DNA from: Macrostomum lignano
Taxonomy: Eukaryota
NCBI GenBank assembly: GCA_002269645.1
Contig: NIVC01000596.1
Span: 1-64,000 of the forward strand
Length of the DNA: 64,000 nucleotides
Direction: 5' to 3'
Below, one piece after another: positions 1-20,853 of this stretch. Numbering within the stretch: position 1 is the first letter of the stretch; every line of letters starts with the position of its first letter. A program made the position numbers and the translations under genes. Below the pieces are notes generated by a model. The model saw only the letters and a program-made list of their open reading frames with translations, made no database searches and was not told the origin of the DNA.

Positions 1-31
1 AAGATTCCAGGTTCGAGTCCTGGCGTGGTCG
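1..31 (+). tRNA. trnR-ACG: tRNA-Arg(ACG), 3' part only (truncated by window start)
   Basis: Identical to the last 31 nt of the complete copies (AAGATTCCAGGTTCGAGTCCTGGCGTGGTCG); followed immediately by TTTT (Pol III terminator-like). Confidence 0.85.
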
Positions 32-288
32 TTTTAAATTTTTTTCCTTACATTTAAGTTAAGAACATTAAAGTAGTTATCGTGGACATTAGAGACATTA
101 GACAAAACTGAAATGCAGTTGTTGCCTTTAAAACGAGTGTTCACCAAGACCTCTTAAAGCCGTTTCCGATTTCAACATTCCAGCCAAGCCTCGCAAGTCA
201 CATGCAGGCCGCGTGATCAACATGCTTGGCAGTAGCTCCGCTTTTTAATAAAATTAGAAATCCGTGCTCAAGGACTCGCAAATGCCGA

Positions 289-361
289 GGCCGCGTGGCG
301 CAATGGATAACGCGTCTGACTACGGATCAGAAGATTCCAGGTTCGAGTCCTGGCGTGGTCG
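289..361 (+). tRNA. trnR-ACG: tRNA-Arg(ACG), flank type A
   Basis: 73-nt cloverleaf GGCCGCG...CGTGGTCG. Anticodon stem TCTGA/TCAGA with loop CT-ACG-GA, A box TGGCGCAATGG, B box GGTTCGAGTCC, T runs within ~15 nt downstream. Confidence 0.97.
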
Positions 362-449
362 CTCTGAAATATATTTTCGATTTTACTTGTATTTTTATAT
401 GGCCACAAAAACAAAATAGTCGTTTGGCAAGAAATCCGGTGGGTCTCCG

Positions 450-930
450 TGCTGCATTGCAATAGGTGTCACGTGTCAGTGAGGCATTGGAATAGGTGTC
501 AGTGAGGCATTGGAATAGGTTACGTGAGGCATTGGAATAGGTGTCAGTGAGGCATTGGAATAGGTGTCAGTGAGGCATTGGAATAGGTGTCAGTGAGCAT
601 TGGAATAGGTTTCAGTGAGGCATTGGAATAGGTGTCAGTGAGGCATTGGAATAGATGTCAGTAAGGCATGGGATTGGTGTCAGTGAGGCATTGAATAGGT
701 GTCAGTGAGGTATTGGAATAGGTGTCAGTGAGGCATTGGAATAGGTGTCAGTGCTGATTGGAATAGATGTCAGTGAGGCATTGGAATAGGTGTCAGTGAG
801 GCATTGGAATAGGTGTCAGTGAGGCATTGGAATAGGTGTCAGTGAGGCATTGGAATAGGTGTCAGTGAGGCATGGAATAGGTGTCAGTGAGGCATTGGAA
901 AGGTGTCAGTGAGGCATTGAATAGGTGGAA
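450..930. repeat. 23-bp minisatellite (GGAATAGGTGTCAGTGAGGCATT)n
   Basis: About 20 tandem units between tRNA A and tRNA B. Confidence 0.95.
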
Positions 931-1083
931 TTCGAATAATTCGAATTTCTCTGGAATTCAGTTTTTCCTCAAAAGATTTAACATGCTCTATAATTACTAC
1001 TGAAATCGTATCCATTAAGAGATTGGCATGTGATCAAAACAGATAAAGGATAAAGGAATGCTCAAGGACTACCAAATTTCGAG

Positions 1084-1156
1084 GGCCGCGTGGCGCAATG
1101 GATAACGCGTCTGACTACGGATCAGAAGATTCCAGGTTCGAGTCCTGGCGTGGTCG
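1084..1156 (+). tRNA. trnR-ACG: tRNA-Arg(ACG), flank type B
   Basis: Identical 73-nt sequence; T run ~15 nt downstream. Confidence 0.97.
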
Positions 1157-1559
1157 CTCTGAGCAATTAATATTTTTTTGTAAATAAATAATCTCAGAGT
1201 TCAATATGCACCTCTGACTGCAGTTGTACATCAGATGTGGAAGTTCTGTCTGTATGCCGTACTCACGCACAATGCAGTGCTGGCGTACTGGTTGGTTCAA
1301 GCTGAGCGCCCCAGCTATTTAAGGTTCTGACATCGAAACTGGCATTCTTTATTTGCTATTCTCCGCGGACAGAAAAGTTTAGACAGAAGAGCCACAGAAT
1401 GCTGAGACAAACTGCCTGCTCTGCTATTCTGCTAATGCTAGCTTTCAATGCAATCGGTGAGTTTTGTAATCTGGCGTTATGATTTGAGTTCTGAGAGATA
1501 CTTGTAGGTTAGTGTGAAATGAAAAGAGTCACTTTCATTGTTTGCATCATGGGAGACTG

Positions 1560-1755
1560 CTGTCACAGCCATAGTCACAGTCACAGTCCCAGTCCCAGTC
1601 ACAGTCACGGTGTCCCAGTCACAGTCACAGTCACAGTTTCATAGTCACAGTCACAGTGTCACAGTCACGGTCACAGTGTTACATTCACAGTCACGGTGTC
1701 ACAGTCACAGTCACAGTCACAGTCACAGTCACAGCCACAGCACTCAGTCACAGTC
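1560..1755. repeat. (GTCACA)n hexamer microsatellite
   Basis: Imperfect hexamer run; paralog at 19405-19620. Confidence 0.9.
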
Positions 1756-2439
1756 AGAACGGTAGTGTCAGCACCCAGTCACAGCTCACAACATACCCCG
1801 ATTCGCCCAGACCCGCAGCTGGACTTCGATGTCACTCAGCATCCAACGCTCCATCGCCAGACGGCAGAGCAGCCAGTGTAAACTGTGTGGCAGGTTATGA
1901 CTACTGCATCAGGTTCTCAGTTGCCATCGGCGGCAGGAAATCGGTATGACGTGAATTCTACCAGTGTCGAATTGCAGTTTTGTCTAAATCCGTTTAAACA
2001 CATGGCCTGTTGCGACCTCTTACTACTTGTGGCAGTAATATAAAATGATTGGCCAAAAACATTTTCAGTACTACAGGGCCTGCTACCTGGACAAGGACGG
2101 CTGCTTAAGCCTCACCTCCTTGCCTAACTATGGAGACTGCTCAGTGTGCTCAGCTGACAACTGCAACTAAGGATTACTACTTTAATGAGTAATCAAGACT
2201 GAACATCTTTTGATAAGCTTTGATATAAGCTGCAAAAACTGGTTGTATCTGTGTATTATATATTAATTTAATTGTAGGCTGAAAGGTAAGATTAACTAAT
2301 GATAGAAAAAAGATTTTTAATTCACGTTGAACTCATAATGATTTTAAAATATATTGAAAAAATTGCATGTACTACTAAAATATTTCATAAAATTAATTTT
2401 CAATTGTTAAAATGGCTTACTTGTTGACTGTCTTAATCA

Positions 2440-5400
2440 TTATCAGGTGTGACTGGGTTGAGCATTATCAGGTGTGACTGGGTTGAGCATTATCAGGTGT
2501 GACTGGGTTGAGCATTATCAGGTGTGACTGGGTTGAGCATTATCAGGTGTGACTGGGTTGAGCATTATCAGGTGTGAATGGGTTGAGCATTATCAGGTGT
2601 GGGTTGATCTTTATCAGGTGTGACTGGTTGAGCATTATCAGGTGTGACTGGGTTATCATTATCAGGTGTGAATGGGTTGAGCATTATCAGGTGTGGGTTG
2701 ATCTTTATCAGGTGTGACTGGGTTGATCTTTATCAGGTGTGACTGGGTTGAGCATTATCAGGTGTGACTGGGTTGAACATTATCAGGTGTGACTGGGTTG
2801 AGCATTATCAGGTGTGACTGGGTTGAGCATTATCAGGTGTGACTGGGTTGAGCATTTTCCGGTGTGACTGGCTTGATCTTTATCAGGTGTGACTGGGTTG
2901 AGCATTATCTGGTGTGACTGGCTGGATCATTATCAGGTGTGACTGGCTTGAGCATTTTCAGGTGTGACTGGCTTGATCATTATCAGGTGTGACTGGCTTG
3001 ATCATTATCAGGTGTGACTGGCTTGATCATTATCAGGTGTGACTAGCTTGATCATTATCGGTGTGACTGGCTGATCATTATCAGGTGTGACTGGCTTGAT
3101 CATTATCAGGTGTGACTGGCTCGAGCATTTTCAGGTGTGACTGGCTGGATCATTATCAGGTGTGACTGGCTTGAGCATTTTCAGGTGTGACTGGCTTGGA
3201 TCATTATCAGGTGTGACTGGCTTGAGCATTTTCAGGTGTTACTGGCTTGATCATTATCAGGTGTGACTAGCTTGATCATTATCAGGTGTGACTGGGTTGA
3301 GCATTTCAGGTGTGACTGGCTTGATCATCATCAGGTGTGACTGGCTTGATCATTATCAGGTGTGACTGGCTGGATCATTATCAGGTGTGACTGGCTTGAG
3401 CATTTCAGGTGTGACTGGCTTGATCATTATCAGGTGTGAATGGCTTGATCAGTATCAGGTGTGACTGGCTTGATCATTATCAGGTGTGACTGGGTTGATC
3501 TTTATCAGGTGTGACTGGGTTGAGCATTATCAGGTGTGACTGGGTTGAGCATTATCAGGTGTCCCTGGCTTGATCATTATCAGGTGTGACTGGCTTGAAC
3601 ATTATCAGGTGTGACTGGCTTGAACATTATCAGGTGTGACTGGCTTGATCATTATCAGGTGGGACTGGCTTGATCATTATCAGGTGGGCTGGCTTGATCA
3701 TTATCAGGTGTGACTGGCTTGATCATTATCGGTGTGACTGGCTGGGTCATTATCTGGTGTGACTGGCTGGATCATTATCAGGTGTGACTGGCTTGAGCAT
3801 TTTCAGGTGTGACTGGCTGGATCATTATCAGGTGTGACTGGCTTGATCATTATCAGGTGTGACTGGCTTGATCATCATCAGGTGTGACTGGCTTGATCAT
3901 TATCAGGTGTGACTGGCTGGATCATTATCAGGTGTGACTGGCTTGAGCATTTTCAGGTGTGACTGGCTTGATCATTATCAGGTGTGAATGGCTTGATCAT
4001 ATCAGGTGTGACTGGCTTGATCATTATCAGGTGTGTCTGGGTTGATCTTATCAGGTGTGACTGGCTTGAGCATTATCAGGTGTGACTGGGTTGAGCATTA
4101 TCAGGTGTCTGGCTTGATCATTATCAGGTGTGACTGGCTTGAACATTATCAGGTGTGACTGGCTTGAACATTATCAGGTGTGACTGGCTTGATCATTATC
4201 AGGTGTGACTGGCTTGATCATTATCAGGTGGGACTGGCTTGATCATTATCAGGTGTGACTGGCTTGATCATTATCGGTGTGACTGGCTGGTCATTATCTG
4301 GTGTGACTGGCTGATCATTATCAGGTGTGACTGGCTTGAGCATTTCAGGTGTGACTGGCTTGATCATTATCAGGTGTGACTGGCTGGATCATTATCAGGT
4401 GTGACTGGCTTGATCATTATCAGGTGTGACTAGCTTGATCATTATCGGGTGTGACTGGCTGGATCATTATCAGGTGTGACTGGCTGGATCATTATCAGGT
4501 GTGACTGGCTCGAGCATTTTCAGGTGTGACTGGGTTGAGCATTATCAGGTGTCTGGCTTGATCATTATCAGGTGTGACTGGCTTGAACATTATCAGGTGT
4601 GACTGGCTTGAACATTATCAGGTGTGACTGGCTTGATCATTATCAGGTGTGACTGGCTTGATCATTATCAGGTGGACTGGCTTGATCATTAGGTGTGACT
4701 GGCTTGATCATTATCGGTGTGACTGGCTGGGTCATTATCTGGTGTGACTGGCTGGATCATTATCAGGTGTGACTGGCTTGAGCATTTTCAGGTGTGACTG
4801 GCTTGATCATTATCAGGTGTGACTGGCTTGATCATTATCAGGTGTGACTGGCTTGATCATTATCAGGTGTGACTGCTTGATCATTATCGGGTGTGACTGG
4901 CTGGATCATTATCAGGTGTGACTGGCTTGATCATTATCAGGTGCGACTGGCTCGAGCATTTTCAGGTGTGACTGGCTGATCATTATCAGGTGTGACTGGC
5001 TTGAGCATTTTCAGGTGTGACTGGCTGGATCATTATCAGGTATGACTGGCTTGAGCATTTTCAGGTGTGACTGGCTTGATCATTATCAGGTGTGACTAGC
5101 TTGATCATTATCAGGTGTGACTGGGTTGAGCATTTTCCGGTGTGACTGGCTTGATCATCATCAGGTGTGACTGGCTTGATCATTATCAGGTGTGACTGGC
5201 TGGATCATTATCAGGTGTGACTGGCTTGAGCATTTTCAGGTGTGACTGGCTTGATCATTATCAGGTGTGAATGGCTTGATCAGTATCAGGTGTGTCTGGG
5301 TTGATCTTTATCAGGTGTGACTGGTTGAGCATTATCAGGTGTGACTGGGTTGAGCATTATCAGGTGTGACTGGGTTGAGCATTATCAGGTGTGACTGGGT

Positions 5401-6845
5401 TGAGCATTATCAGGTGTGACTGGTTTGAGCATTATCAGGTGTGACTGGGTTGAGCATTATCAGGTGTGACTGGGTTGAGCATTATCAGGTGTGACTGGGT
5501 TGAGCATTATCAGGTGTGACTGGTTGAGCATTATCAGGTGTGACTGGGTTGAGCTTATCAGGTGTGACTGGGTTGAGCATTATCAGGTGTGACTGGGTTG
5601 AGCATTATCAGGTGTGACTGGTTGAGCATTATCAGGTGTGACTGGTTGAGCATTATCAGGTGTGACTGGGTTGAGCATTATCAGGTGTGACTGGTTGAGC
5701 ATTATCAGGTGTGACTGGCTTGATCATTTATCAGGTGTGACTGGCTTGAGCATTATCAGGTGTGACTGGCTTGATCATTATCAGGTGTCCTGGCTTGATC
5801 ATTATCAGGTGTGACTGGCTTGATCATTATCAGGTGTACTGGCTTGATCATTATCAGGTGTGACTGGCTTGATCATTATCAGGTGTAACTGGCTTGATCA
5901 TTATCAGGTGTCTGGCTTGATCATTATCAGGTGTGACTGGCTTGATCATTAGCAGGTGTAACTGGCTTGATCATTATCAGGTGGGACTGGCTTGATCATT
6001 ATCAGGTGTGACTGGCTTGATCATTATCAGGTGTGACTGGCTTGAGCATTATCAGGTGTGACTGGCTTGATCATTATCAGGTGTGACTGGCTTGATCATT
6101 ATCAGGTGTGACTGGCTTGATCATTATCAGGTGTGACTGGCTTGATCATTATCAGGTGTGAATGGCTTGAACATTATCAGGTGTGACTGGCTTGATCGTT
6201 ATCAGGTGTTACTGGCTTGATCATTATCAGGTGTGATTGCCTTGATCATTATCAGGTGTGACTGGCTTGAGCATTTTCAGGTTGACTGGCTTGATCATTA
6301 TCAGGTGTGAATGGCTTGATCAGTATCAGGTGTGACTGGCTTGATCATTATCAGGTGTGTCTGGGTTGATCTTTATCAGGTGTGACTGGGTTGAGCATTA
6401 TCAGGTGTGACTGGGTTGAGCATTATCAGGTGTGACTGGGTTGAGCATTATCAGGTGTGACTGGGTTGAGCATTATCAGGTGTGACTGGGTTGAGCATTA
6501 TCAGGTGTGACTGGGTTGAGCATTATCAGGTGTGACTGGCTTGATCATTATCAGGTGTGACTGGGTTGAGCATTATCAGGTGTGACTGGCTTGATCATTA
6601 TCAGGTGTGACTGGGTTGAGCATTATCAGGTGTGACTGGGTTGAGCATTATCAGGTGTGACTGGGTTGAGCATTATCAGGTGTGACTGGGTTGAGCATTA
6701 TCAGGTGTGACTGGGTTGAGCATTATCAGGTGTGACTGGCTTGATCATTATCAGGTGTGACTGGTTGAGCATTATCAGGTGTGACTGGGTTGAGCATTAT
6801 CAGGTGTGACTGGGTTGAGCATTATCAGGTGTGACAGCATTATCA
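2440..6845. repeat. 25-bp minisatellite (CATTATCAGGTGTGACTGGCTTGAT / ...GGGTTGAG)n
   Basis: About 175 tandem units with recurring variant blocks. Confidence 0.97.
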
Positions 6846-7070
6846 CAGTCAGTTAGTTTGTATTGCAATGGAGAGAATGGAAAAGGTTATTAAGGCAAGC
6901 GACAATGCTACAGGTTCAGCAGGTATACGAAGATACCTGAATACAGAAAACCTGCCGCACATAACCACTTTGTGACGGCTCTGGCTGACGACAGCAGGTC
7001 AAATAAATCTGGAAATCAGATTCAGTATTTTCAATTTTATTTGACAGACTGAGGCAGTTCTGCTGCCGAG

Positions 7071-7143
7071 GGCCGCGTGGCGCAATGGATAACGCGTCTG
7101 ACTACGGATCAGAAGATTCCAGGTTCGAGTCCTGGCGTGGTCG
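7071..7143 (+). tRNA. trnR-ACG: tRNA-Arg(ACG), flank type C
   Basis: Identical 73-nt sequence; T7 run shortly downstream. Confidence 0.97.
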
Positions 7144-7214: not shown

Positions 7215-7975
7215 AGTGAGTGTCAGTAATGCATTGGAAAAGGTGTCAGTGAGTCATTATAATAGACTTCAGTGAGGCATTGGAATAGGTGTCAGTGAGG
7301 CATTGGAATATGTCAATGAGGCATTGGAATAGGTGTCAGTAAGGCATTGGAATATGTGTCAGTACTGCATTGGAATATATGTCAGTAAGGCATTGGAATA
7401 GGTGTCAGTGAGGCATTGGAATAGGTGTCAGTGAGGCATTGGAATAGGTGTACGTGAGGCATTGGAATAGGTGTCAGTGAGGCATTGGAATAGGTGTCAG
7501 TGAGGCATTGGAATAGGTGTCAGTAAGGCATTGGAATATGTGTCAGTACTGCATTGGAATATATGTCAGTAAGGCATTGGAATAGGTGTCAGTGAGGCAT
7601 TGGAATAAGTGTCAGTGAGGCATTGGAATAGGTGTACGTGAGGCATTGGAATAGGTGTCAGTGCTGCATTGGAATAGGTGTCAGTGAGGCATTGGAATAG
7701 GTGTCAGTGAGGCATTGGAATAGGTGTCAGTGAGGCATTGGAATAGGTGTCAGTGAGGCATTAGAATAGGTGTCAGTGAGGCATTGGAATAGGTGTCAGT
7801 GAGGCATTGGAATAGGTGTCAGTGAGGCATTGGAATAGGTGTCAGTGAGGCATTGGAATAGGTGTCAGTGAGGCATTGGAATAGGTGTCAGTGAGGCATT
7901 AGAATAGGTGTCAGTGAGGCATTGGAATAGGTGTCAGTGAGGTATTGGAATAGGTGTCAGTGAGGCAATAGGTTT
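7215..7975. repeat. 23-bp minisatellite (same family as 450-930)
   Basis: About 33 units downstream of tRNA C. Confidence 0.95.
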
Positions 7976-9863
7976 TAGTGATGTAATGATGGAATAATGT
8001 TAATTATGTAAATAAATATGCAAATGGTGCAAACACCCGAGACGGCGGCGCGTCACTGGGGAGCAGAGCTCAACCATCCGGTTGTAGGCCGTGTGCTGCA
8101 CTCTCTGCCCCACATTATTCATGACTCACTTCTCTCGCCTAAACTTGTTTACCGATTCTCGACCAATCACGCATCGCTTCACCCTTAACCCAACATTGAC
8201 TAATAAATATACTGAGCAAACAAAGCCACACAGAGGCCATCTTTTTTTCGGCACGCTAACCTAGACTTCACACCGGTCCGTTGCAGTCGGTAGAAGTGGT
8301 CGTCGGCAGGAGAGCAGTCGATGTCCGAGCTCCTTCTTATTGAGCGGGGTGGTCATTTTGAGCTGGGAGAAGACGGCTCAGGGATTCCAGGGAAATCAAA
8401 GAACTGTCAAGATCAGATCAGCGTGACGTAGATTCAGGCAATGAACCCATGCCTCCGACAAGTTCGAACTCCGATCCTTCGACAGGATCCGAGCTACGAG
8501 CTATCTATTTCCAATAGTTGTTACTAATAGCAAGCTGAGGGATGTTATTGCTTTAAAAATACACGAAAAGAGTTTAATAAGCGAAATCAACATGATGCTG
8601 ATGTAACCGCCCTTGTCGCCCGTCCGCTCCGTTGAGAGACGAACGCATGACCAGAGGGGGCAATGACCGTAGGCTGCCTATGACCGGGCAATGACCTGAC
8701 GGACCTCCAGCACCAGACTGTCCCACCCAATGATTGATAGCTTTGGTAGCGCTCTCGTGACCAGAGGGCCAAGGACCCACATGGACCCCACCTGTAGCCA
8801 AGGTGCAATAGTTGGTCACTCGGTCAGAGCATGACCGAATGGCTGCCACCGCTCTATGTGACCTGGCGCACCTGGATCTTATTACCAGACCTCTCGAGAC
8901 TAGAGCCCCGCCTGGATTGGTTACCAGGGGATTTAGGCTAACAGGGGAGACACATGCAGCCGAGTACAGGGACTCTGCTTGGGGCATGATCGGGAACTCT
9001 GGGCTCAATCTGGAGGATTTCTCATCAGGGGATCCTTTGTGGCTGTGAGCGAGGCTGACTTGCGGCTTCAATTACTAAGAGTAGTGTGAGGCGAACATGT
9101 ACTGTCTCTAGTTTCGATTGCTCAGGGCGAAGGGGCACGTCAGCATGGGGTTGCAACCTTCCTACTGCCATTCTGTGCCAAGACTCGCTAATCCCCTCTA
9201 CTGCACGCACACTCGGACCCGCAGCACGCACTCACAGGCGAGCTTTGCACGGGGAGAGGCCATTAGCTTACCCAAACTTCCTTATGCTTTGCCACTCAGG
9301 GAGAAAGGCTTAGCAAGCCATGAATGAAATGATGGTGAAAGAGTGAATAATGAGGAGGTTAGTAATAGTTAATAATTAGGCCCTTAGGCAAAATAATCGG
9401 GCAATAAGGCGGCTTCACTATTGAGTAAAATACAGCAAAATATACGGTATCAAGATTGGCTCAGCTCTCTAATTAAGCAATGGAAAATAGGCGAACCCCG
9501 GATAAGCAAGGCAATCAGAGCACAAATTAGTAATAGGAACTTACCTGCGGCTGCACAGAGAGAGGGAGAGAGAGAGCGATGGAGTGACCGTGGGCGGCTA
9601 TTGGCTGCAGTCGGGCAGGCAGTGAAGCGGCGATGCGCTGAAGCGACGAGGCGCTGATGTAGTTCAGGCGATGCTGAAGATGATTGGCGGTGACAGACCG
9701 CGGACCGACAGATGAGCTCACTTGGGGAGCTGAAGATAACTTGGCGGTGACAGACCGCGGACCGGCAGAGGTTCGTCCTATAGACGAATGGGTCAGATCG
9801 AGGTCTGACAGCAAGCCCACAATAGGGACAAGACAAAAGCCTTAGAGTAAGCGTCTGAGGGTT

Positions 9864-10355: not shown

Positions 10356-10529
10356 TCGAGGGGAAAGAGGGGTCACAAGACTTTCGTCACCGTTTGGGAG
10401 TTTACTAAGGGGTGGGGAGACGGTGAGCGCACAAAGTACTGTAAGTAGGTACCAGAAAAGGGAGAGAGCGCAGAAAAACAGTGCAAAAAGAGACAAAAAG
10501 ATAAGAAGCGGGAAAAGTACAAGCTAGAT

Positions 10530-13500
10530 GGGGCCTCACTCACCCAGAACTACAAGGAAACTGACAGAAACGCCTCACTCACCCAGAACTACAAGGAAAC
10601 TAACAGAAACGCCTCACTCACACAGAACTACAAGGAAACTCACACAAACGCCTCACTCACACAGAGCTACAAGGAAACTGACAGCAACGCCTCACTCACA
10701 CAGAACTACAAGGCAACTGAGAGAAACACCTCACTCACACAGAACTACAAGGAAACAACTGACACAAACGCATCACTCACACAGAACTACAAGGCAACTG
10801 AGAGAAACGCCTCACTCACACAGAACTACAAGGAAACAACTGACACAAACGCCTCACTCACACAGAACTACAAGGAAACTAACAGAAACGCCTCACTCAC
10901 ACAGAACTACGAGTACAAGGAAACTAACAGAAACGCCTCATTCACCCAGAGCTACAAGGAAACTGACAGAAACGCCTCACTCAACCAGAACTACAAGGAA
11001 ACTGACAAACGCCTCACTCACCAGAACTACAACGAAACTGACAGAAACGCCTGACTCACACAGAACTACAAGGAAACTGACAGAAACGCCTCAATCGCAC
11101 AGAACTACAAGGAAACTGAGAGAAACGCCTCACTCACACAGAGCTACAAGGAAACTGAGAGAAACGCCTCACTCACACAGAACTACAAGGAAACTAACAG
11201 AAACGCCTCACTCACACAGAACTACGAGTACAAGGAAACTAACAGAAATGCCTCACTCACACAGAGCTACAAGGAAACTGACAGAAACGCCTCACTCACA
11301 CAGAACTACGAGTACAAGGAAACTAACAGAAATGCCTCACTCAACCAGAGCTACAAGGAAACAACTGACACAAACGCCTCACTCACACAGAACTACAAGG
11401 AAACTAACAGAAACGCCTCACTCACACAGAACTACAAGGAAACTGACAGAAACGCCTCACTCACCCAGAACTACAATGAAACTGACAGAAACGCCTCACT
11501 CACACAGAACTACAAGGCAACTGAGAGAAACACCTCACTCACACAGAACTACAAGGAAACAACTGACACAAACGCCTCACTCACACAGAACTACAAGGAA
11601 ACAACTGACACAAACGCCTCACTCACACAGAACTACAAGGAAACAACTGACACAAACGCCTCACTCACACAGAACTACAAGGAAACTGACAGAAACGCCT
11701 CACTCACCCAGAACTACAAGGCAACTGACACAAACGCCTCACTCACACAGAACTACAAGGAAACTGAGAGAAACGCCTCACTCACACAGAACTACAAGGA
11801 AACTAACAGAAACGCCTCATTCACCCAGAGCTACAAGGAAACTGACAAACGCCTCACTCACCCAGAACTACAACGAAACTGACAGAAACGCCTGACTCAC
11901 ACAGAACTACAAGGAAACTGACAGAAACGCCTCAATCGCACAGAACTACAAGGAAACTGAGAGAAACGCCTCACTCACACAGAACTACAAGGAAACTAAC
12001 AGAAACGCCTCACTCACACAGAACTACGAGTACAAGGAAACTAACAGAAATGCCTCACTCACACAGAGCTACAAGGAAACTGACAGAAACGCCTCACTCA
12101 CACAGAACTACGAGTACAAGGAAACTAACAGAAATGCCTCACTCAACCAGAGCTACAAGGAAACAACTGACACAAACGCCTCACTCACACAGAACTACAA
12201 GGAAACTAACAGAAACGCCTCACTCACACAGAACTACAAGGAAACTGACAGAAACGCCTCACTCACCCAGAACTACAATGAAACTGACAGAAACGCCTCA
12301 CTCACACAGAACTACAAGGCAACTGAGAGAAACACCTCACTCACACAGAACTACAAGGAAACAACTGACACAAACGCCTCACTCACACAGATCTACAAGG
12401 AAACAACTGACACAAACGCCTCACTCACACAGAACTACAAGGAAACAACTGACACAAACGCCTCACTCACACAGAACTACAAGGAAACAACTGACACAAA
12501 CGCCTCACTCACACAGAACTACAAGGAAACTGACAGAAACGCCTCACTCACACAGAACTACAAGGAAACTGACAGAAACGCCTCACTCACACAGAACTAC
12601 AAGGAAACTGACAGAAACGCCTCACTCACACAGAACTACAAGGAAACTGACAGAAACGCCTCACTCACACAGAGCTACAAGGAAACTGACAGCAACGCCT
12701 CACTCACCCAGAACTACAACGAAACTGACATAAACGCCTCACTCACACAGAACTACAAGGAAACTGACAGAAACGCCTCAATCGCACAGAACTACAAGGA
12801 AACTGACAGAAACGCCTCAATCGCACAGAACTACAAGGAAACTGACAGAAACGCCTCACTCACACAGAACTACAAGGAAACTGACAAACGCCTCACTCAC
12901 CCAGAACTACAACGAAACTGACATAAACGCCTCACTCACACAGAACTACAAGGAAACTGACAGAAACGCCTCAATCGCACAGAACTACAAGGAAACTGAC
13001 AGAAACGCCTCACTCACACAGAACTACAAGGAAACTGACAGAAACGCCTCACTCACACAGAACTACAAGGAAACTGACAGAAACGCCTCACTCACACAGA
13101 ACTACAAGGAAACTGACAAAAAAACGCCTCAATCGCACAGAACTACAAGGAAACTGAGAGAAACGCCTCACTCACACAGAGCTACAAGGAAACTGACAGA
13201 AACGCCTCACTCACACAGAACTACAACGAAACTGACAGAAACGCCTCACTCACCCAGAACTACAAGGAAACTGACAGAAACGCCTCACTCACACAGAGCT
13301 ACAAGGAAACTGACAGCAACGCCTCACTCACCCAGAACTACAAGGAAACTGACAAACGCCTCACTCACCAGAACTACAACGAAACTGACATAAACGCCTC
13401 ACTCACACAGAACTACAAGGAAACTGACAGAAACGCCTCAATCGCACAGAACTACAAGGAAACTGACAGAAACGCCTCACTCACACAGAACTACAAGGAA

Positions 13501-15452
13501 ACTGACACAAACGCCTCACTCACACAGAACTACAAGAAAACTGACAGAAACGCCTCACTCACACAGAACTACAAGGAAACTGACACAAACGCCTCACTCA
13601 CACAGAACTACAAGGAAACTGACAGAAACGCCTCACTCACACAGAAATACAAGGAAACTGACACAAACGCCTCACTCACACAGAACTACAAGGAAACAAC
13701 TGACACAAACGCCTCACTCACACAGAACTACAAGGAAACTGACAGAAACGCCTCACTCACACAGAACTACAAGGCAACTGAGAGAAACACCTCACTCACA
13801 CAGAACTACAAGGAAACAACTGACAGAAACCCTCACTCACACAGAAATACAAGGAAACTGACAGAAACACCTCACTCACATAGAACTACAAGGAAACAAC
13901 TGACACAAACGCCTCACTCACACAGAACTACAAGGAAACTGACAGAAACGCCTCACTCACACAGAACTACAAGGAAACTGACACAAACGCCTCACTCACA
14001 CAGAACTACAAGGAAACTGACAGAAACGCCTCACTCACACAGAACTACAAGGAAACTGACAGAAACGCCTCACTCACACAGAACTACAAGGCAACTGAGA
14101 GAAACACCTCACTCACACAGAACTACAAGGAAACAACTGACACAAACGCCTCACTCACACAGAACTACAAGGAAACGGACACAAACGCCTCACTCACCCA
14201 GAACTACAATGAAACTGACAGAAACGCCTCACTCACACAGAACTACAACGAAACTGTCAGAAACGCCTCACTCACCCAGAACTACAAGGAAACTGACAGA
14301 AACGCCTCACTCACCAGAACTACAAGGAAACTAACAGAAACGCCTCACTCACACAGAACTACAAGGAAACTGACAGAAACGCCTCACTCACACAGAACTA
14401 CAATGAAACTGACAGAAACGCCTCACTCACACAGAACTACAATGAAACTGACAGAAACGCCTCACTCACACAGAACTACAAGGCAACTGAGAGAAACACC
14501 TCACTCACACAGAACTACAAGGAAACAACTGACACAAACGCCTCACTCACACAGAACTACAAGGAAACAACTGACACAAACGCCTCACTCACACAGAACT
14601 ACAAGGAAACAACTGACACAAACGCCTCACTCACACAGAACTACAAGGAAACTGACAGAAACGCCTCACTCACACAGAACTACAAGGCAACTGAGAGAAA
14701 CACCTCACTCACACAGAACTACAAGGAAACTAACAGAAACGCCTCACTCAATCAGAACTACAACGAAACTGACAGAAACGCCTGACTCACACAGAACTAC
14801 AAGGCAACTGAGAGAAACACCTCACTCACACAGAACTACAACGAAACTGACACAAACGCCTCACTCACACAGAACTACAAGGAAACTGACAGAAACGCCT
14901 CACTCACCCAGAACTACAATGAAACTGACAGAAACGCCTCACTCACCAGAACTACAAGGAAACTGACAGAAACGCCTCACTCACCCAGAACTGCAAGGAA
15001 ACTGACAGAAACGCCTCACTCACCCAGAACTACAAGGAAACTGACAGAAACGCCTCACTCACCCAGAACTACAAGGAAACTGACAGAAACGCCTCACTCA
15101 CCCAGAACTACAAGGAAACTGACAGAAACGCCTCACTCACCCAGAACTACTCGAAACTGACAGAAACGCCTCACTCACACAGAACTACAAGGAAACTGAC
15201 AGAAACGCCTCACTCACCCAGAACTACAAGGAAACTGACAGAAACGCCTCACTCACCCAGAACTACAAGGAAACTGACAGAAACGCCTCACTCACCCAGA
15301 ACTACTCGAAACTGACAGAAACGCCTCACTCACCCAGAACTACAAGGAAACTGACAGAAACGCCTCACTCACCCAGAACTACTCGAAACTGACAGAAACG
15401 CCTCACTCACACAGATCTACAAGGAAACTGACAGAAACGCGTCACTCACCCA
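10530..15452. repeat. 39-bp minisatellite (ACTGACAGAAACGCCTCACTCACACAGAACTACAAGGAA)n
   Basis: About 125 units with 38/42/45-bp variants and ~800-840-bp higher-order duplications (e.g. 11041 vs 11882). Confidence 0.97.
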
Positions 15453-17059
15453 GAGTATCGGTAAGCTCGGATATCCTTCGTGCCGGCACCTCCTGCAGTG
15501 GTCCCTGCTGCCACGGTCGCACTCCAGCAGGGCGCAGTCGCCCGATGCAGTGTCGAAAGACGCCACATGAGCCTTCGCCGCCTGAGATTTGCTAAGACAG
15601 ACGAACTTGCTCTTAGCCTTGAACGTTGATAGCACCCTGTACTCGGCGAGGTCGCCTCAAACCGGCTTCCAGCTCCAAGATGACGTGGCAGAGACGGGCA
15701 GCGGAGACGGTAAAACGCAGGTGACGGCCAGCAGCAACAGTTGAAGGGCCGCAGTCATTTCTCAGGGCAATTGGAGACTTTACTTTTAGGTTGTGGCGAA
15801 TGCTTTGATGTTGCAAAGAAGCGATTGCAGTTTTTCTCTCGGAAGGGCCAGGATTTTTCGAACGCTGCAGATTTTGTGTCTGAAGTGACTCGTATTTATG
15901 CAGAATTTTTCAGCCTTTCAATTTTGCGTGAATGCCTGCAGATTTCTGTTGAATGAGGTGTGATACCTTTGACAATTTCTGTGCTGTGTTAATCTGCTTC
16001 ATTGGTTGCATCTGCATTTGGCTGTCTTGCCGCTTCAGCACGCTTGACAATGGCTTGACAGATGCCGCGCAGAAGAAAGCGAGTCTTTGAATTGTTTTGC
16101 TGCGTGAGGTAAACTGTTGATCCGTGAGGCGCTTCCAGACTGAGCTGCGCTGCATTGAGCTGCATTGCGCGGCACAATCAGTCATTGAAATGGTTGCTGA
16201 ATTGCTTCTGCTTTCAGCTCTGTAGTTAAGATGGCTTCTGCTTCAGAATCCAGAATACAGACTCACCATTGAATGGCTCCACTCACGACAAAGATGTATT
16301 GTTTTCTGTTCAAATACTCCGTTCTGTTCCACTGGCTCCTCACTCACTGAATCGACGCAAAGCGACACTGCATAGCGAGACTTCAAAAATCTCCCTTTGA
16401 AGCAGTCGCTTTTTGTGTGTTTGTTTTTCTGCTCTTTATTCGGTTGAAAACAGTTTTCTTTCGACTCAGCTTTATCGTCATTTCGACTGACTCCTTTACC
16501 CGTCTCTATTGACAGCTGCTTTTGGTGAATAGTGTTAGGAAGAGAGAAAGTCAGCAAACCATGAAAAGAAGGCACGCATTTAGCGAAAATATTCTGCTGG
16601 ATTATCAGGATGCTGTACTAGAATTGGCGCAAGTAAAATTAAGAAATTCATAGATAGCCAGAAGCAAGAATATTGCCCCATAGGCAAATGAACTGGCCGT
16701 GGCACCAGATATCCATACGCTAAACTGCAATCGTGCAAAATTGTTTGCTTGAATTCCAGTTTGCTCAAAATCTAAGCACACGATCTCTTGCATCCCGGAC
16801 TGTCATCACAGATTTTGTGTCCATGTATTGTGTCCAAGGCGCAGGTTGTGTCGAAGCATATTTTTTGGCATCAGTAAAAGCAACACGCAGGCTCGAACGC
16901 TGGCCAACACCAAGCAAAGAAATTGAATTGTAGAAGTCAGCCGCTTAGCAGGAACTCGAGCTCTCGCTGTGGGAAAGTCAAAAGCGTCATAGTTTGAATA
17001 TAGGGCGGGTTAGGCCAAAGACCTTTCTCGCCAGTGGGACTTTAAAGTGGGTGTTACTA

Positions 17060-17665
17060 GATATTAAAGTAGGTGTCGGTGGACATCAAAGTAGGTGTCG
17101 GTGGACATTAAAGTAGGTGTCGGTGGACATTAAAGTTGGTGTCGGTGGACATTAAAGTTGGTGTCGGTGGACATTAAAGTAGGTGTCGGTGGACATTAAA
17201 GTAGGTGTCGGTGGACATTAAAGTAGGTGTCGGTGGACATTAAAGTAGGTGTCGGTGGACATTAAAGTAGGTGTCGGTGGACATTAAAGTAGGTGTCGGT
17301 GGACATTAAAGTAGGTGTCGGTGGACATTAAAGTAGGTGTCGGTGGACATTAAAGTTGGTGTCGGTGGACATCAAAGTAGGTGTCGGTGGACATTAAAGT
17401 AGGTGTCGGTGGACATTAAAGTAGGTGTCGGTGGACATTAAAGTTGGTGTCGGTGGACATTAAAGTTGGTGTCGGTGGACATTAAAGTTGGAGTCGGTGG
17501 ACATTAAAGTAGGTGTCGGTGGACATTAAAGTAGGTGTCGGTGGACATTAAAGTTGGAGTCGGTGGACATTAAAGTAGGTGTCGGTGGACATTAAAGTAG
17601 GTGTCGGTGGACATTAAAGTTGGTGTCGGCCGGTGGACATTTAACTAGGTATCGGTGGACATTAG
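17060..17665. repeat. 22-bp minisatellite (GGTGGACATTAAAGTAGGTGTC)n
   Basis: About 27 units; only a degenerate 1-2 unit remnant sits at the paralogous site (~61-100). Confidence 0.95.
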
Positions 17666-17875
17666 AGCAAGTATCAATGGACAAAAGTGAAATGCAGTTG
17701 TTGCCTTTAAAAACGAGTGTTCACCAAGAGCCTCTTAAAGCCGTTTCCGATTTCAACATTCCCAGCCAAGCCTCGCAAAGTCACATGCAGGCCGCGTGAT
17801 CAAACATGCTTAGCAGCAGCTGTGATTTTGAAAATAAAATTAGAAATCCGTGCTCAAGGACTGCCAAATGCCGAG

Positions 17876-17948
17876 GGCCGCGTGGCGCAATGGATAACGC
17901 GTCTGACTACGGATCAGAAGATTCCAGGTTCGAGTCCTGGCGTGGTCG
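17876..17948 (+). tRNA. trnR-ACG: tRNA-Arg(ACG), flank type A (second cassette)
   Basis: Identical 73-nt sequence; flanks match those of the copy at 289-361. Confidence 0.97.
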
Positions 17949-18034
17949 CTCTGAAATATATTTTTTCGATTTTACTTGTATTTTTATATGGCCACAAAAA
18001 TATCAGAATAGTCATTTGTCAAGAAATTCTGTGG

Positions 18035-18770
18035 GTGTCAGTGCTGCATTGGAATGGGTGTCAGTGCTGCATTGGAATAGATGTCAGTGCTGCATTGGAA
18101 TAGATGTCAGTGCTGCATTGGAATAGGTGTCAGTGCTGCATTGGAATAGATGTCAGTGCTGCATTGGAATAGGTGTCAGTGCTGCATTGGAATAGGTGTC
18201 AGTGAGGCATGGAATAGGTGTCAGTGAGGCATTGGAATAGGTGTCAGTGCTGCATTGGAATAGGTGTCAGTGAGGCATGGAATAGGTGTCAGTGAGGCAT
18301 TGGAATAGGTGTCAGTGCTGCATTGGAATAGGTGTCAGTGAGGCATTGGAATAGGTGTCAGTGAGGCATTGGAATAGGTGTCAGTGAGGCATTGGAATAG
18401 GTGTCAGTGAGGCATTGGAATAGGTGTCAGTGAGGCATTGGAATAGGTGTCAGTGAGGCATTGGAATAGGTGTCAGTGAGGCATTGGAATAGGTGTCAGT
18501 GAGGCATTGGAATAGGTGTCAGTGAGGCATTGGAATAGGTGTCAGTGAGGCATTGGAATAGGTGTCAGTGAGGCATTGGAATAGGTGTCAGTGAGGCATT
18601 GGAATAGGTGTCAGTGAGGCATTGGAATAGGTGTCAGTGAGGCATTGGAATAGGTGTCAGTGAGGCATTGGAATAGGTGTCAGTGAGGCATTGGAATAGG
18701 TGTCAGTGAGGCATTGGAATAGGTGTCAGTGAGGCATTGGAATAGGTGTCAGTGAGGCATTGGAATAGGT
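18035..18770. repeat. 23-bp minisatellite (same family as 450-930)
   Basis: About 32 units between tRNA A and tRNA B of cassette 2. Confidence 0.95.
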
Positions 18771-18926
18771 GGAATTCGAATAATTCGAATTTTTCTGGAA
18801 TTCAGTTTTTCCTCAAAAGATTTAACATGCTCTATAATTACTACTGAAATCGTATCCATTAAGAGATTGGCATGTGATCAAACAGATAAAGGATAAAGGA
18901 ATGCCCAAGGACTACCAAATTTCGAG

Positions 18927-18999
18927 GGCCGCGTGGCGCAATGGATAACGCGTCTGACTACGGATCAGAAGATTCCAGGTTCGAGTCCTGGCGTGGTCG
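18927..18999 (+). tRNA. trnR-ACG: tRNA-Arg(ACG), flank type B (second cassette)
   Basis: Identical 73-nt sequence; flanks match those of the copy at 1084-1156. Confidence 0.97.
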
Positions 19000-19404
19000 C
19001 TCTGAGCTATTAATATTTTTTTGTAAATAAATAATCTCAGAGTTCAATATGCACCTCTGACTGCAGTTGTACATCAGATGTGGAAGTTCTGTCTGTATGC
19101 CGTACTCACGCACAATGCAGTGCTGGCGTACTGGTTGGTTCAAGCTGAGCGCCCCAGCTATTTAAGGTTCTCACAGCGAAACTGGCATTCTTTATTCGCT
19201 ATTCTCCGCGGACAGAAAAGTTTAGACAGAAGAGCCACAGAATGCTGAGACAAACTGCCTGCTCTGCTATTCTGCTAATGCTAGCTTTCAATGCAATCGG
19301 TGAGTTTTGTAATCTGGCGTTATGATTTGAGTTCTGAGAGATACTTGTAGGTTAGTGTGAAATGAAAAGAGTCACTTTCATTGTTTGCATCATGGGAGAC
19401 TGCT

Positions 19405-19620
19405 GTCACAGTCACAGTCACTGTCACTGTCACATTAACAATTACAGGCGCATTGTCACAGTCACGGTGTCACAGTCACAGTCACGGTGTCACAGTCACG
19501 GTGTCACAGTCACGGTGTCACAGTCACAGTGTCACAGTCACAGTCACGGTGTCACAGTCACATTCACAGTCACTGTCACTGTCACAGCCACAGTCACAGC
19601 CACAGCACTCAGTCACAGTC
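19405..19620. repeat. (GTCACA)n hexamer microsatellite
   Basis: Paralog of 1560-1755. Confidence 0.9.
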
Positions 19621-20294
19621 AGAACGGTAGTTTCAGCACCCAGTCACAGCTCACAACATACCCCGATTCGCCCAGACCCCGCAGCTGGACTTCGATGTCA
19701 CTCAGCATCCAACGCTGCATCGCCAGATGGTAGAGCAGCCAGTGTAAACTGTGTGGCAGGTTATGACTACTGCATCAGGTTCTCAGTTGCCATCGGCGGC
19801 AGGAAATCGGTATGACGTGACTTCTACCAGTGTCGAATTGCAGTTTTGTCTAAATCCGTTTAAACACATGGCCTGTTGCGACCTCTTACTACTTGTGGCA
19901 GTAATATAAAATGATTGGCCAAAAACATTTTCAGTACTACAGGGCCTGCTACCTGGACAAGGACGGCTGCTCAAGCCTCACCGCCTTGCCTAACTATGGA
20001 GACTGCTCAGTGTGCTCAGCTGACAACTGCAACTAGGATACTACTTTAATGAGTAATCAAGAGTGAACATCTTTTGACAAGCTTTGATATAAGCTGCAAA
20101 AACTGGTTGTATCTGTGTATTATATATTCATTTAATTATAGGCTCAAAGGTACGATTAACTAATGATAGAAAAAAGATTTTTAATTCACGTTGAACTCAT
20201 AAAATATATTGAAAAAATTGCATGTAATACTACTAAAATATTTCATAAAATTAATTTTCAATTGTTAAAATGGCTTACTTGTTGACTGTCTCAA

Positions 20295-20540
20295 TCAATA
20301 TCAGGTGTGACTGGCTTGATAATTATCAGGTGTGACTGGCTTGATCGTTATCAGGTGTGACTGGCTTGATCATTATCAGGTGTGACTGGCTTGATCATTA
20401 TCAGGTGTGACTGGCTTGATAATTATCAGGTGTGACTGGCTTGATCGTTATCAGGTGTGACTGGCTTGATCATTATCAGGTGTGACTGGCTTGATAATTA
20501 TTAGGTGTCCCTGGCTTGATCATTATCAGGTGTGACTGGC
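20295..20540. repeat. 25-bp minisatellite, short allele
   Basis: About 10 units of the family at 2440-6845. Confidence 0.95.
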
Positions 20541-20780
20541 CCATATCATGCTCACAGTCAGCTATTTAGTATTACAATGGAGAGAATGGAAAAGGTTATT
20601 AAGGCAAGCGACAATGCGACAGGTTCAGCAGGTATACGAAGATATCTGAATATAGAAAACCTGCCGCACATAACCACTTTGTGACGGCTCTGGCTGACGA
20701 TAGCAGGTCAAATAAATCTGGAAATCAGATTCAGTATTTTTCAATTTTATTTGACAGACTGAGGCAGTCCTGCTGCCGAG

Positions 20781-20853
20781 GGCCGCGTGGCGCAATGGAT
20801 AACGCGTCTGACTACGGATCAGAAGATTCCAGGTTCGAGTCCTGGTGTGGTCG
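20781..20853 (+). tRNA. trnR-ACG: tRNA-Arg(ACG), flank type C, C66T variant
   Basis: Same 73-nt sequence except C to T at 20846 (tRNA position 66); upstream flank matches the copy at 7071; T run downstream. Confidence 0.93.

What the first reader, a model, noticed from the sequence alone, without database searches (positions are those of the whole stretch)
1..20853. tRNA-Arg(ACG) array with minisatellite-filled spacers, reminiscent of Entamoeba tRNA-STR arrays
Seen: seven co-oriented tRNA-Arg(ACG) genes; five of the six complete copies are identical and the sixth differs at one base. They form a repeated A-B-C cassette, and each spacer carries a characteristic tandem repeat (22-bp before A, 23-bp after A, hexamer plus 25-bp after B). 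Established: tRNA genes separated by spacer-specific short tandem repeats are a known hallmark of Entamoeba. Inference: a similar architecture in a metazoan would be unusual. It may be a recombination-homogenised tRNA dosage locus or a structural chromatin domain.
Basis: partly seen in the sequence, partly recalled or inferred. Interest (0 to 1): 0.78.

Follow-up and report, generated by a model that had tools for sequence, protein, structure and literature searches.

The report
Tandem tRNA-Arg gene cluster, flatworm genome
This is a real cluster of arginine tRNA genes in the flatworm Macrostomum lignano, built by repeated duplication and crossing-over of a unit that also carries a small protein gene. 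Its minisatellite-filled spacers reflect a genome full of minisatellites, not a special tRNA system like the one in Entamoeba.

Summary
There are six complete tRNA-Arg(ACG) genes plus one 3' fragment, all on the + strand. Five are identical and one differs by C66T. They form two A-B-C cassettes with 22-, 23-, 25-bp and GTCACA arrays.

The window is the first 64 kb of Macrostomum lignano contig NIVC01000596.1, so the truncated first tRNA is an assembly break.

The Entamoeba reading mostly fails:
- The tRNA-free 43 kb of the window has more arrays per kb (0.63 against 0.43).
- Every furin intron has its own array.
- Simple and tandem repeats make up 15% of this genome.
- The B-C spacer holds a spliced Ly6/uPAR-like gene, with the hexamer in its intron 1.
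- Tandem tRNA units with internal variable repeats are already known in animals (human 1q23.3).

Two other contigs carry the same furin-PP2C-tRNA-Arg locus. One shows a clean tandem repeat of about 3.7-3.9 kb: two tRNAs, the Ly6-like gene and three minisatellites, with units 99.9% identical.

Five combinations of upstream and downstream flanks occur, with breakpoints inside the 73-nt gene. This indicates unequal crossing-over between tRNA copies. The copy at the array edge is mutated in all three versions.

Verdict: an ordinary, recombining tRNA gene cluster, and a new member of a known kind.

The parts
1..31 (+). 3' end (positions 43-73) of a tRNA-Arg(ACG) gene, cut by the start of contig NIVC01000596.1. 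A TTTT terminator follows at +1.
   Evidence: Contig coordinates are established.
289..361 (+). tRNA-Arg(ACG) copy A1, with an A-type upstream and an A-type downstream flank
   Evidence: A box TGGCGCAATGG, B box GGTTCGAGTCC, and a T4 run at +13.
473..927 (+). 23-bp minisatellite, 20 copies (GTGTCAGTGAGGCATTGGAATAG)
1084..1156 (+). tRNA-Arg(ACG) copy B1
1399..2170 (+). Ly6/uPAR(QVR)-like small secreted protein gene, copy 1. Exons are 1399-1456, 1819-1943 and 2069-2170. A C-run that is 1 nt shorter breaks the frame if the acceptor annotated for copy 2 is used.
1561..1756 (+). GTCACA hexamer array inside intron 1 of the Ly6-like gene
2425..6835 (+). 25-bp minisatellite, 178 copies, downstream of the Ly6-like gene
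7071..7143 (+). tRNA-Arg(ACG) copy C1, a hybrid: C-type upstream flank, but a diverged A-like downstream flank
   Evidence: seg5: about 26% from the other A-type downstream flanks
7220..7967 (+). 23-bp minisatellite, 32.6 copies, the same family as the array after A
7968..17036 (.). Inter-cassette spacer 'M': unique DNA plus a 39-bp array of 124 copies at 10533-15454. No recognisable gene or transposon.
   Evidence: Its right part is also present in L004.
17037..17664 (+). 22-bp minisatellite, 28 copies. The unit is homologous to the 23-bp unit.
   Evidence: rank 3 of 325 unit pairs
17876..17948 (+). tRNA-Arg(ACG) copy A2
18034..18771 (+). 23-bp minisatellite, 32 copies
18927..18999 (+). tRNA-Arg(ACG) copy B2
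19200..20036 (+). Ly6/uPAR-like gene, copy 2, matching GenBank model BOX15_Mlig009825g1 (111 aa, partial). ATG at 19242. Exons end or start at 19299, 19685 (annotated acceptor 9 nt upstream), 19809 and 19935. Stop at 20036.
19405..19621 (+). GTCACA hexamer array in intron 1 of copy 2
20283..20540 (+). 25-bp minisatellite, 10 copies
20781..20853 (+). tRNA-Arg(ACG) copy C2, the terminal copy. It has C66T, a C-type upstream flank and a unique downstream flank (Z).

Best explanation
This is a multi-copy tRNA-Arg(ACG) gene cluster in Macrostomum lignano.

Shown:
- The cluster was built by repeated tandem duplication of a unit of a few kb. The unit has two Pol III tRNA genes, one Pol II gene for a small secreted Ly6/uPAR-like protein, and three non-coding minisatellites (23-bp, intronic GTCACA, 25-bp).
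- It has been reshaped by crossovers whose breakpoints fall inside the identical 73-nt tRNA genes. This gives hybrid flank combinations and different unit numbers in different copies of the locus.
- The minisatellites are carried along with each duplication and then change copy number independently.

Inferred:
- The crossovers are unequal (non-allelic) homologous recombination between tRNA copies.
- The tRNA bodies stay identical through purifying selection, and in part through this recombination. Copies at the array edge escape both and decay.
- The minisatellites are not a tRNA-specific device. They are the local expression of a genome-wide tendency of M. lignano non-coding DNA to form locus-specific arrays.
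- The cluster's function is simply to supply tRNA-Arg(ICG) for CGU, CGC and CGA codons.
For: Gene quality. All complete window copies score 55-59 bits against an Rfam gathering score of 29. They have canonical A and B boxes and a run of at least four T within 17 nt downstream.

Organism and locus.
- The PP2C exon is 99% identical to an M. lignano protein.
- L001 is 100% identical to window 34563-12657.

Unit structure. In L003 (NIVC01000719.1), read in window orientation, the order is: 23-bp array, B, Ly6 gene with hexamer and 25-bp array, C-up/A-down tRNA, 23-bp array, B, Ly6 gene, C-up/A-down tRNA, 23-bp array, B-up/Z-down tRNA, then Z. The two units differ at 1 of 1784 aligned bases.

Flank shuffling. 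Five flank pairings occur: A/A, B/B, C/Z, C/A and B/Z. Flank identity runs right up to the gene on each side. For example, the A-type downstream flank shows 0 of 85 mismatches between window A2 and an L003 hybrid.

Independent history of units.
- W1 to W2 is 2.4% diverged, W2 to L003 2.3%, and W2 to L004 0.5%.
- A MITE-like insertion is present in both L003 units and absent elsewhere.

Constraint on the tRNA body.
- Cassette copies differ at 1 of 219 tRNA bases, where 5.3 would be expected at 2.4% divergence (Poisson P = 0.03).
- A, B and C flanks are not alignable beyond about 25 nt, yet the gene bodies are identical.

Edge decay.
- The Z-adjacent copy is mutated in all three versions: C66T; A34G plus A58T (B box); G10T (A box).
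- The 11 internal copies carry only one shared change, A46C (Fisher P = 0.02).

Minisatellites are generic.
- Arrays per kb are 0.43 in the tRNA region against 0.63 in the rest of the window, and 0.22 in the unrelated locus L005, which has 5 arrays, 4 of them inside annotated genes.
- Non-tRNA arrays also keep their unit but change copy number between contigs (42-bp: 9.9, 18.5, 14.5; 21-bp: 5.8 against 20.8).
- Simple and tandem repeats make up 15% of the assembly (PMC5730564).

Protein gene. The Ly6-like gene is annotated in GenBank, and its CDS is intact in 4 of 5 copies.

Codon demand. CGU, CGC and CGA make up 55 of 103 Arg codons in the window's coding stretches.
Against: - Tandem-repeat coverage is higher in the tRNA regions (60%, 44% and 57%) than in their neighbours (35%, 25%, 25%) and than the 15% genome figure. 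A mild local enrichment is therefore not excluded.
- All copies come from one PacBio/Illumina assembly of a hidden polyploid. REAPR scored only 64% of its bases as error-free, and it has 180 Mb of redundancy. I cannot tell whether L003 and L004 are alleles, homeologues or extra-chromosome copies.
- Cassette 1 sits at a contig end. Its adjacency to spacer M rests on this contig alone.
- Expression of individual tRNA copies was not tested.
- Selection and gene conversion cannot be separated with these data.
Confidence: 0.8

Rival explanations
1. This is an Entamoeba-like dedicated tRNA-STR array system. The tRNA genes and their short tandem repeats form one functional unit, for example a structural or telomere-like chromatin domain, and the repeats exist because of the tRNA genes.
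For: - Co-oriented tRNA genes lie in a tandemly repeated unit with spacer-specific repeats.
- Tandem-repeat coverage is higher in the tRNA regions than in the flanks.
- The contig breaks inside the array.
Against: - Minisatellites are as frequent per kb away from the tRNAs, and they lie in the introns of ordinary genes.
- The unit contains a spliced protein-coding gene.
- Only a few units are seen per contig, against the long arrays of about 4,500 genes that make up over 10% of the Entamoeba genome.
- Only a single isoacceptor is involved.
- The locus is embedded between ordinary genes (furin, PP2C), not at an obvious chromosome end.
Confidence: 0.04
2. This is an assembly artefact. The second cassette in the window, or the first at the contig end, is a haplotype or duplicate-chromosome copy wrongly joined in tandem, so the two-cassette arrangement is not real.
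For: - Mlig_3_7 has large redundancy and many REAPR-flagged bases.
- Cassette 1 lies in the first 7 kb of the contig.
- The junction between the 23-bp array and spacer M (7967/7968) sits at a repeat present in several places.
- The 2.4% divergence between cassettes is in the same range as the divergence between locus copies.
Against: - An independently assembled contig (L004) reproduces the 39-bp array, the rest of M, the 22-bp array and the A-B-C order at 98.3% identity.
- Another contig (L003) shows clean tandem units.
- Cassette 1 has private features: a diverged A-like flank after C1, 178 copies of the 25-bp repeat, three amino-acid changes, and a downstream flank after the cut first tRNA (T0) that was not seen next to any tRNA in L003 or L004. 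It is therefore a distinct unit, not a re-read of cassette 2.
- A 73-nt repeat is too short to mislead long-read assembly into making hybrid flanks.
Confidence: 0.1
3. tRNA genes actively promote minisatellite growth nearby, for example through replication-fork stalling at Pol III complexes. This would explain why the largest arrays (4.4 and 4.9 kb) lie in the cluster.
For: - Tandem-repeat coverage is 44-60% in the three tRNA regions, against 8-35% elsewhere.
- tDNA clusters are discussed as replication-fork pause sites associated with genomic instability (PMC2888827).
Against: - Array number per kb is not raised in the window's tRNA region (0.43, against 0.63 in the rest).
- The excess coverage comes from two giant arrays. 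One of them (the 39-bp array) starts 3.4 kb from the nearest tRNA.
- The same 25-bp array has only 10-26 copies in four other units.
- Only one locus family was sampled.
Confidence: 0.06

Closest known systems
Entamoeba histolytica / E. dispar tRNA gene arrays with intergenic STRs (Tawari et al. 2008, PMC2652664)
   Same: - tRNA genes lie in a tandemly repeated unit.
- Unit-specific short tandem repeats lie between adjacent genes.
- Repeat number varies between copies while the repeat sequence is kept.
   Different: - Entamoeba has about 4,500 tRNA genes in 25 array types, making up over 10% of the genome. Here a few units are seen per contig.
- Entamoeba STRs are mostly 7-12 bp and confined to the arrays, in a genome that appears to lack other mini- and microsatellites. 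Here the units are 6-39 bp and such arrays are everywhere.
- Here the unit contains a protein-coding gene and a single isoacceptor.
Human 1q23.3 tRNA VNTR (Darrow & Chadwick 2014, PMC4041453)
   Same: - It is a metazoan, multi-kb unit repeated head to tail.
- Each unit holds several tRNA genes.
- Units are about 98% identical and differ by SNPs and by the copy number of internal simple repeats.
- Unit number is variable.
   Different: - The human unit is 7.3 kb with five tRNA genes of four acceptor types (Leu, Gly x2, Glu, Asp) on both strands.
- It has 9-43 units per allele and binds CTCF.
- No other transcription units were detected in it.
- Here the unit is about 3.7-3.9 kb, with two same-strand tRNA-Arg genes and a Ly6-like gene. 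The repeats are minisatellites, not microsatellites.
Homogeneous tDNA clusters of eukaryotes (Bermudez-Santana et al. 2010, PMC2888827) and plant tandem tRNA clusters (for example the Arabidopsis tRNA-Cys 0.4-kb units, PMC10701932)
   Same: Same-isoacceptor, parallel-oriented tRNA genes clustered by local duplication, with rapid turnover and poor synteny.
   Different: That survey's cluster criterion is spacing under 1 kb. Here only 3 of the 6 gaps between successive tRNAs in the window meet it. The others are 1.8-10.7 kb because arrays and a gene fill the spacers.

Membership tests
Entamoeba-type tRNA-STR array | Short tandem repeats lie between adjacent tRNA genes of a unit | tested here: met
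   23-bp, hexamer plus 25-bp, and 22-bp arrays lie between the genes.
Entamoeba-type tRNA-STR array | STRs are confined to the tRNA arrays, and the genome otherwise appears to lack mini- and microsatellites (PMC2652664) | tested here: not met
   27 arrays lie in the tRNA-free 43 kb of the window. There are 5 more in the unrelated locus L005. Simple and tandem repeats make up 15% of the genome.
Entamoeba-type tRNA-STR array | Long tandem arrays hold most tRNA genes of the genome (over 10% of the genome) | tested here: inconclusive
   Two cassettes are seen in the window and at least 2.5 units in L003. Both run off the available sequence. A genome-wide count was not possible with these tools.
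Entamoeba-type tRNA-STR array | The unit consists of tRNA genes (with or without 5S) and spacers only. No protein-coding content is described in PMC2652664; stating this as a defining feature rests on my own knowledge. | tested here: not met
   A three-exon Ly6-like gene is present in every unit and is annotated in GenBank.
Metazoan tandem tRNA gene repeat (1q23.3 type) | A multi-kb unit with tRNA genes is repeated head to tail at high identity | tested here: met
   L003 units are 99.94% identical over 1784 nt. The window cassettes are 97.6% identical.
Metazoan tandem tRNA gene repeat (1q23.3 type) | Units differ by the copy number of internal tandem repeats | tested here: met
   25-bp array: 178, 10, 10, 14.5 and 26.5 copies. 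23-bp array: 15 to 32.6 copies (a seventh 23-bp array in L003 is cut by the locus end). Hexamer: 31-59 copies.
Metazoan tandem tRNA gene repeat (1q23.3 type) | Unit number varies between alleles | tested here: inconclusive
   The three contigs have different structures. Whether they are alleles, homeologues or extra-chromosome copies is unknown.
Metazoan tandem tRNA gene repeat (1q23.3 type) | Insulator (CTCF) binding or boundary function | not testable with these tools
   No chromatin data are available.
Functional nuclear tRNA-Arg(ACG) gene | Cloverleaf fold with anticodon ACG, internal A and B boxes, and an oligo-T terminator | tested here: met
   The terminal copies in L003 (G10T in the A box) and L004 (A34G, A58T in the B box) fail this test.
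Functional nuclear tRNA-Arg(ACG) gene | Transcribed by Pol III and aminoacylated | not testable with these tools
   No expression data are available.
Ly6/uPAR (three-finger, QVR) protein | Matches the family profile above its curated threshold | tested here: inconclusive
   Pfam QVR gives E = 7.5e-4 and 20.9 bits, below the gathering score of 27.3. A hydrophobic N-terminus that looks like a signal peptide (read by eye, no predictor run), 8 Cys and a C-terminal C-N motif are read from the sequence. The AF2 model is unusable, with pLDDT 40.5.
tRNA-derived SINE or retro-copies | A tRNA-like head followed by a SINE body and tail, dispersed, with target-site duplications | tested here: not met
   The genes are full-length with intact 3' ends. 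A Pol III terminator follows within 1-17 nt. No shared body or tail is present. The copies lie in colinear duplicated segments.

The most novel reading that the evidence does not exclude
In M. lignano the identical 73-nt tRNA-Arg genes act as portable recombination modules. They shuffle and amplify neighbouring segments, including a protein-coding gene. Conflicts between Pol III and replication at these genes locally drive extreme minisatellite expansion. On this reading the locus is a young, independently evolved flatworm counterpart of the Entamoeba tRNA-STR arrays.
Probability: 0.08. Interest if true: 0.6.

Novelty: new member of a known kind. Interest (0 to 1): 0.3.

Why it matters
- It adds a documented flatworm example to the tandem tRNA gene repeats known from humans, plants and protists.
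- The molecular record is unusually clear. Crossover breakpoints fall inside the tRNA gene, a Pol II gene is co-amplified, and the copies at the array edge decay.
- It cautions that in M. lignano a locus-specific minisatellite beside any feature is the default state of non-coding DNA, not a signal.
- The arrays could serve as VNTR markers. The locus could also test the assembly quality of this hidden-polyploid genome.
- It does not open a new mechanism.

Tried and rejected
- Exact search for the 73-nt tRNA in metagenome contigs: 0 hits.
- Look-up of the raw PP2C ORF: not on record.
- The first protein search, with the furin exon, gave only 52-61% identity hits. The organism stayed unknown until the PP2C exon search.
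- Ly6-like gene:
  - The single-sequence AlphaFold model of the Ly6-like protein has pLDDT 40.5. It is unusable, so I ran no fold search.
  - The PDB sequence search gave nothing meaningful.
  - The homologue search for the Ly6-like protein found only its own GenBank model.
- Spacer M:
  - Pfam on three ORFs of 7968-10532 found no family. The other ORFs of spacer M were only inspected by eye, with nothing obviously coding.
  - The repeat search found no LTRs or TIRs, so there is no evidence that M is a transposon.
- The SINE or retro-copy origin is rejected (see the membership test).
- A shared 'core' motif among all arrays of the tRNA region is rejected. Only the 22- and 23-bp units are clearly related. 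The 25- and 39-bp units are not.
- I could not read NIVC01000595.1 beyond 11.7 kb or NIVC01000719.1 beyond the 10-kb flank, because no annotated protein gives access there.
- The Wasik et al. 2015 genome paper is not held in the library.

Full report
**1. Observation**

ARAGORN and Rfam both find six complete tRNA-Arg(ACG) genes on the + strand, at 289, 1084, 7071, 17876, 18927 and 20781. Bases 1-31 are the last 31 nt of a seventh copy. Five copies are identical. The last carries C66T, which changes G7:C66 to a G:U pair. Each gene has canonical A and B boxes (TGGCGCAATGG, GGTTCGAGTCC) and a run of at least four T within 17 nt downstream. There is no other tRNA, or fragment of one, in the remaining 43 kb.

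Flank alignment defines three gene contexts, A, B and C, which recur in the same order. Self-BLAST aligns 65-7146 with 17637-20856.

Five corrections apply:
- The 22-bp array is expanded only before A2.
- A 23-bp array also follows C1.
- A 39-bp, 124-copy array fills much of the 10.7-kb gap between the cassettes.
- The hexamer is intronic.
- The first tRNA is truncated by the contig end.

**2. Where the window comes from**

The PP2C exon at 23883-24563 (- strand) is 99% identical to a Macrostomum lignano protein. The contig that encodes it, NIVC01000596.1 of GCA_002269645.1 (assembly Mlig_3_7), is 100% identical to the window over 21,907 bp. Record coordinates equal window coordinates. The window is therefore bases 1-64000 of that contig, and the assembly broke inside a tRNA gene.

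M. lignano is a hidden polyploid (PMC10468722). Simple and tandem repeats make up 15% of its assembly. The assembly also holds 180 Mb of duplicated blocks that are at least 95% identical, and only 64% of its bases are error-free by REAPR (PMC5730564).

**3. The spacers are not just repeats**

Between B and C lies a three-exon gene (ATG at 1399 and 19242). It encodes a 94-aa protein with a hydrophobic N-terminus that looks like a signal peptide, eight cysteines and a C-terminal ...CSADNCN. Pfam gives a sub-threshold match to the Quiver/Ly6-uPAR family (E = 7.5e-4). GenBank annotates copy 2 as BOX15_Mlig009825g1. The GTCACA hexamer array lies in its intron 1, and the 25-bp array lies after its 3' end.

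**4. Are the minisatellites linked to tRNA genes?**

No. The window holds 36 arrays that cover 43% of it.

| Region | Arrays per kb | Tandem-repeat coverage |
|---|---|---|
| Window, tRNA region (1-20853) | 0.43 | 60% |
| Window, rest (20854-64000) | 0.63 | 35% |
| L003, tRNA region | 0.85 | 44% |
| L003, rest | 0.57 | 25% |
| L004, tRNA region | 0.61 | 57% |
| L004, rest | 0.57 | 25% |
| L005 (unrelated locus, no tRNA) | 0.22 | 8.5% |

- Every intron of the neighbouring furin gene has its own private array. The unrelated 22.7-kb M. lignano locus L005 has five arrays, four of them inside the annotated PP2C and GST genes.
- The 22-, 23-, 25- and 39-bp families occur nowhere else in the window. 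The same is true of almost every array here: each is locus-specific.
- Coverage is higher in the tRNA regions. In the window this is because of two giant arrays, and it leaves room for a mild local effect.
- Arrays far from the tRNAs behave the same way between contigs. They keep their unit but change copy number.

**5. Comparative evidence from other copies of the locus**

Two further contigs carry the same furin-PP2C-tRNA-Arg arrangement.

- L004 (NIVC01000595.1) is 0.5% diverged from cassette 2. It reproduces the order: 39-bp array, 22-bp array, A, 23-bp array, B, Ly6 gene, 25-bp array, C.
- L003 (NIVC01000719.1) is 2.3-3.3% diverged. It shows a clean tandem repeat of about 3.7-3.9 kb. Each unit runs: a tRNA with C-type upstream and A-type downstream flanks, the 23-bp array, tRNA B, the Ly6 gene with its hexamer, then the 25-bp array.
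- The two L003 units differ at 1 of 1784 aligned bases. Both contain a MITE-like insertion of about 450 bp that is absent from the window and from L004.

In the window, 'A' with its 22-bp array is an older, diverged duplicate of 'B' with its 23-bp array. Their upstream flanks share about 25 nt, and the 22- and 23-bp units are homologous.

**6. Recombination at the tRNA genes**

Five pairings of upstream and downstream flank occur around the same gene: A/A, B/B, C/Z, C/A and B/Z. Flank identity holds right up to the gene on each side. The breakpoints therefore lie within the 73 nt. That is what unequal homologous exchange between tRNA copies would produce. A repeat this short should not mislead a long-read assembler.

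Unit numbers differ between contigs. The nearly identical L003 units post-date the MITE insertion. The window cassettes are as diverged from each other (2.4%) as from L003. Duplication and loss are therefore ongoing and independent in each copy of the locus.

**7. Constraint and decay**

At 2.4% divergence about 5 differences would be expected in the 219 nt of paired tRNA genes. One is seen (P = 0.03). Across the A, B and C contexts the flanks are unalignable, yet the gene bodies are identical.

The copy next to the unique flank Z is mutated in all three versions:

| Version | Change in the Z-adjacent copy | Effect |
|---|---|---|
| Window | C66T | G7:C66 becomes G:U |
| L004 | A34G plus A58T | Anticodon becomes GCG; B box altered |
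| L003 | G10T | A box and D stem altered |

The eleven internal copies carry only one shared change, A46C (Fisher P = 0.02). This fits the known picture of a high mutation input at transcribed tRNA genes, held in check by purifying selection (bioRxiv 10.1101/229906). It also fits the classical escape of edge copies from homogenisation.

**8. Comparison with known systems**

Entamoeba arrays share the descriptive architecture. They differ in the features their authors treat as distinctive: STRs found only in the arrays, about 4,500 genes making up over 10% of the genome, and 25 array types (PMC2652664).

A closer match is the human 1q23.3 tRNA VNTR. Its 7.3-kb units hold five tRNA genes and four copy-number-variable simple repeats, the units are about 98% identical, and there are 9-43 units per allele (PMC4041453). 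Large tDNA clusters have arisen repeatedly in eukaryotes (PMC2888827). The claim that such an architecture is unusual in a metazoan therefore does not hold.

**9. Verdict**

This is a real but ordinary tRNA-Arg gene cluster, evolving by unequal crossing-over in a genome saturated with minisatellites. The modest points of interest are the co-amplified Ly6-like gene, the breakpoints inside the tRNA genes and the decaying edge copies.

Three things remain unverified:
- the physical join of cassette 1 to the rest of the contig;
- the status of the three contigs as alleles or homeologues;
- the expression of individual tRNA copies.

Noticed in passing
window 1-64000 (whole window): 43% of the window is minisatellite: 36 arrays with periods of 4-82 bp, each essentially locus-specific. 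Every intron of the furin/PCSK gene (about 32.9-41.3 kb) carries its own array. This is well above the 15% simple and tandem repeat content reported for the assembly.
   Followed up: partly
window 55279-56855 and 57363-58417: Two 15-bp minisatellite arrays (about 103 and 69 copies) are reverse complements of each other (GGTATTGATCTATTG and its complement). They flank a spacer of about 500 bp, forming a kb-scale inverted repeat made of tandem repeats.
   Followed up: no
window 45649-45878 and 46324-46574: Two 21-bp arrays lie in frame inside a 661-aa ORF next to an MFS-like exon. They encode PSVAAPQ and TTKTTDS heptad repeats, so they are coding minisatellites.
   Followed up: no
L003 (NIVC01000719.1); reverse-complement coordinates about 1440-2580 and 5090-6229: A MITE-like element of about 450 bp, with terminal inverted repeats of about 28 bp (CACAGATACTAGAATAACTAGAT...), is inserted at the start of the 25-bp array in both tandem units. 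It is absent from the window and from L004.
   Followed up: partly
L004 3526-3599 (NIVC01000595.1): The terminal tRNA copy has anticodon GCG (A34G) and A58T. The equivalent window copy (20781-20853) has C66T instead. That is three differences in 73 nt between loci that are only 0.5% diverged elsewhere.
   Followed up: partly
window 1811-1819 against 19676-19685: Ly6-like gene copy 1 has CCC where the other four copies have CCCC, between two candidate splice acceptors. With the acceptor used in the GenBank model, copy 1 is frameshifted. This may be a real lesion or a homopolymer sequencing error.
   Followed up: partly
window 10528-15454: The 39-bp array keeps open reading frames of up to 455 aa (a 13-aa repeat, TPHSHRTTRKLTE). 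This is probably incidental, since 39 is a multiple of 3 and the frame breaks repeatedly.
   Followed up: no
window 41411-41919 and 44857-45222: A 45-bp array and a 27-bp array about 3 kb apart share the motif GGATTGCTAGACT, which suggests a common origin.
   Followed up: no
window 21189-21447; L003 13463-13740; L004 2948-3179: A 15/30-bp array lies between the last tRNA and PP2C. Its unit organisation differs between the three contigs, and one strand reads as a GAKAP-like peptide repeat. No gene is annotated there.
   Followed up: no
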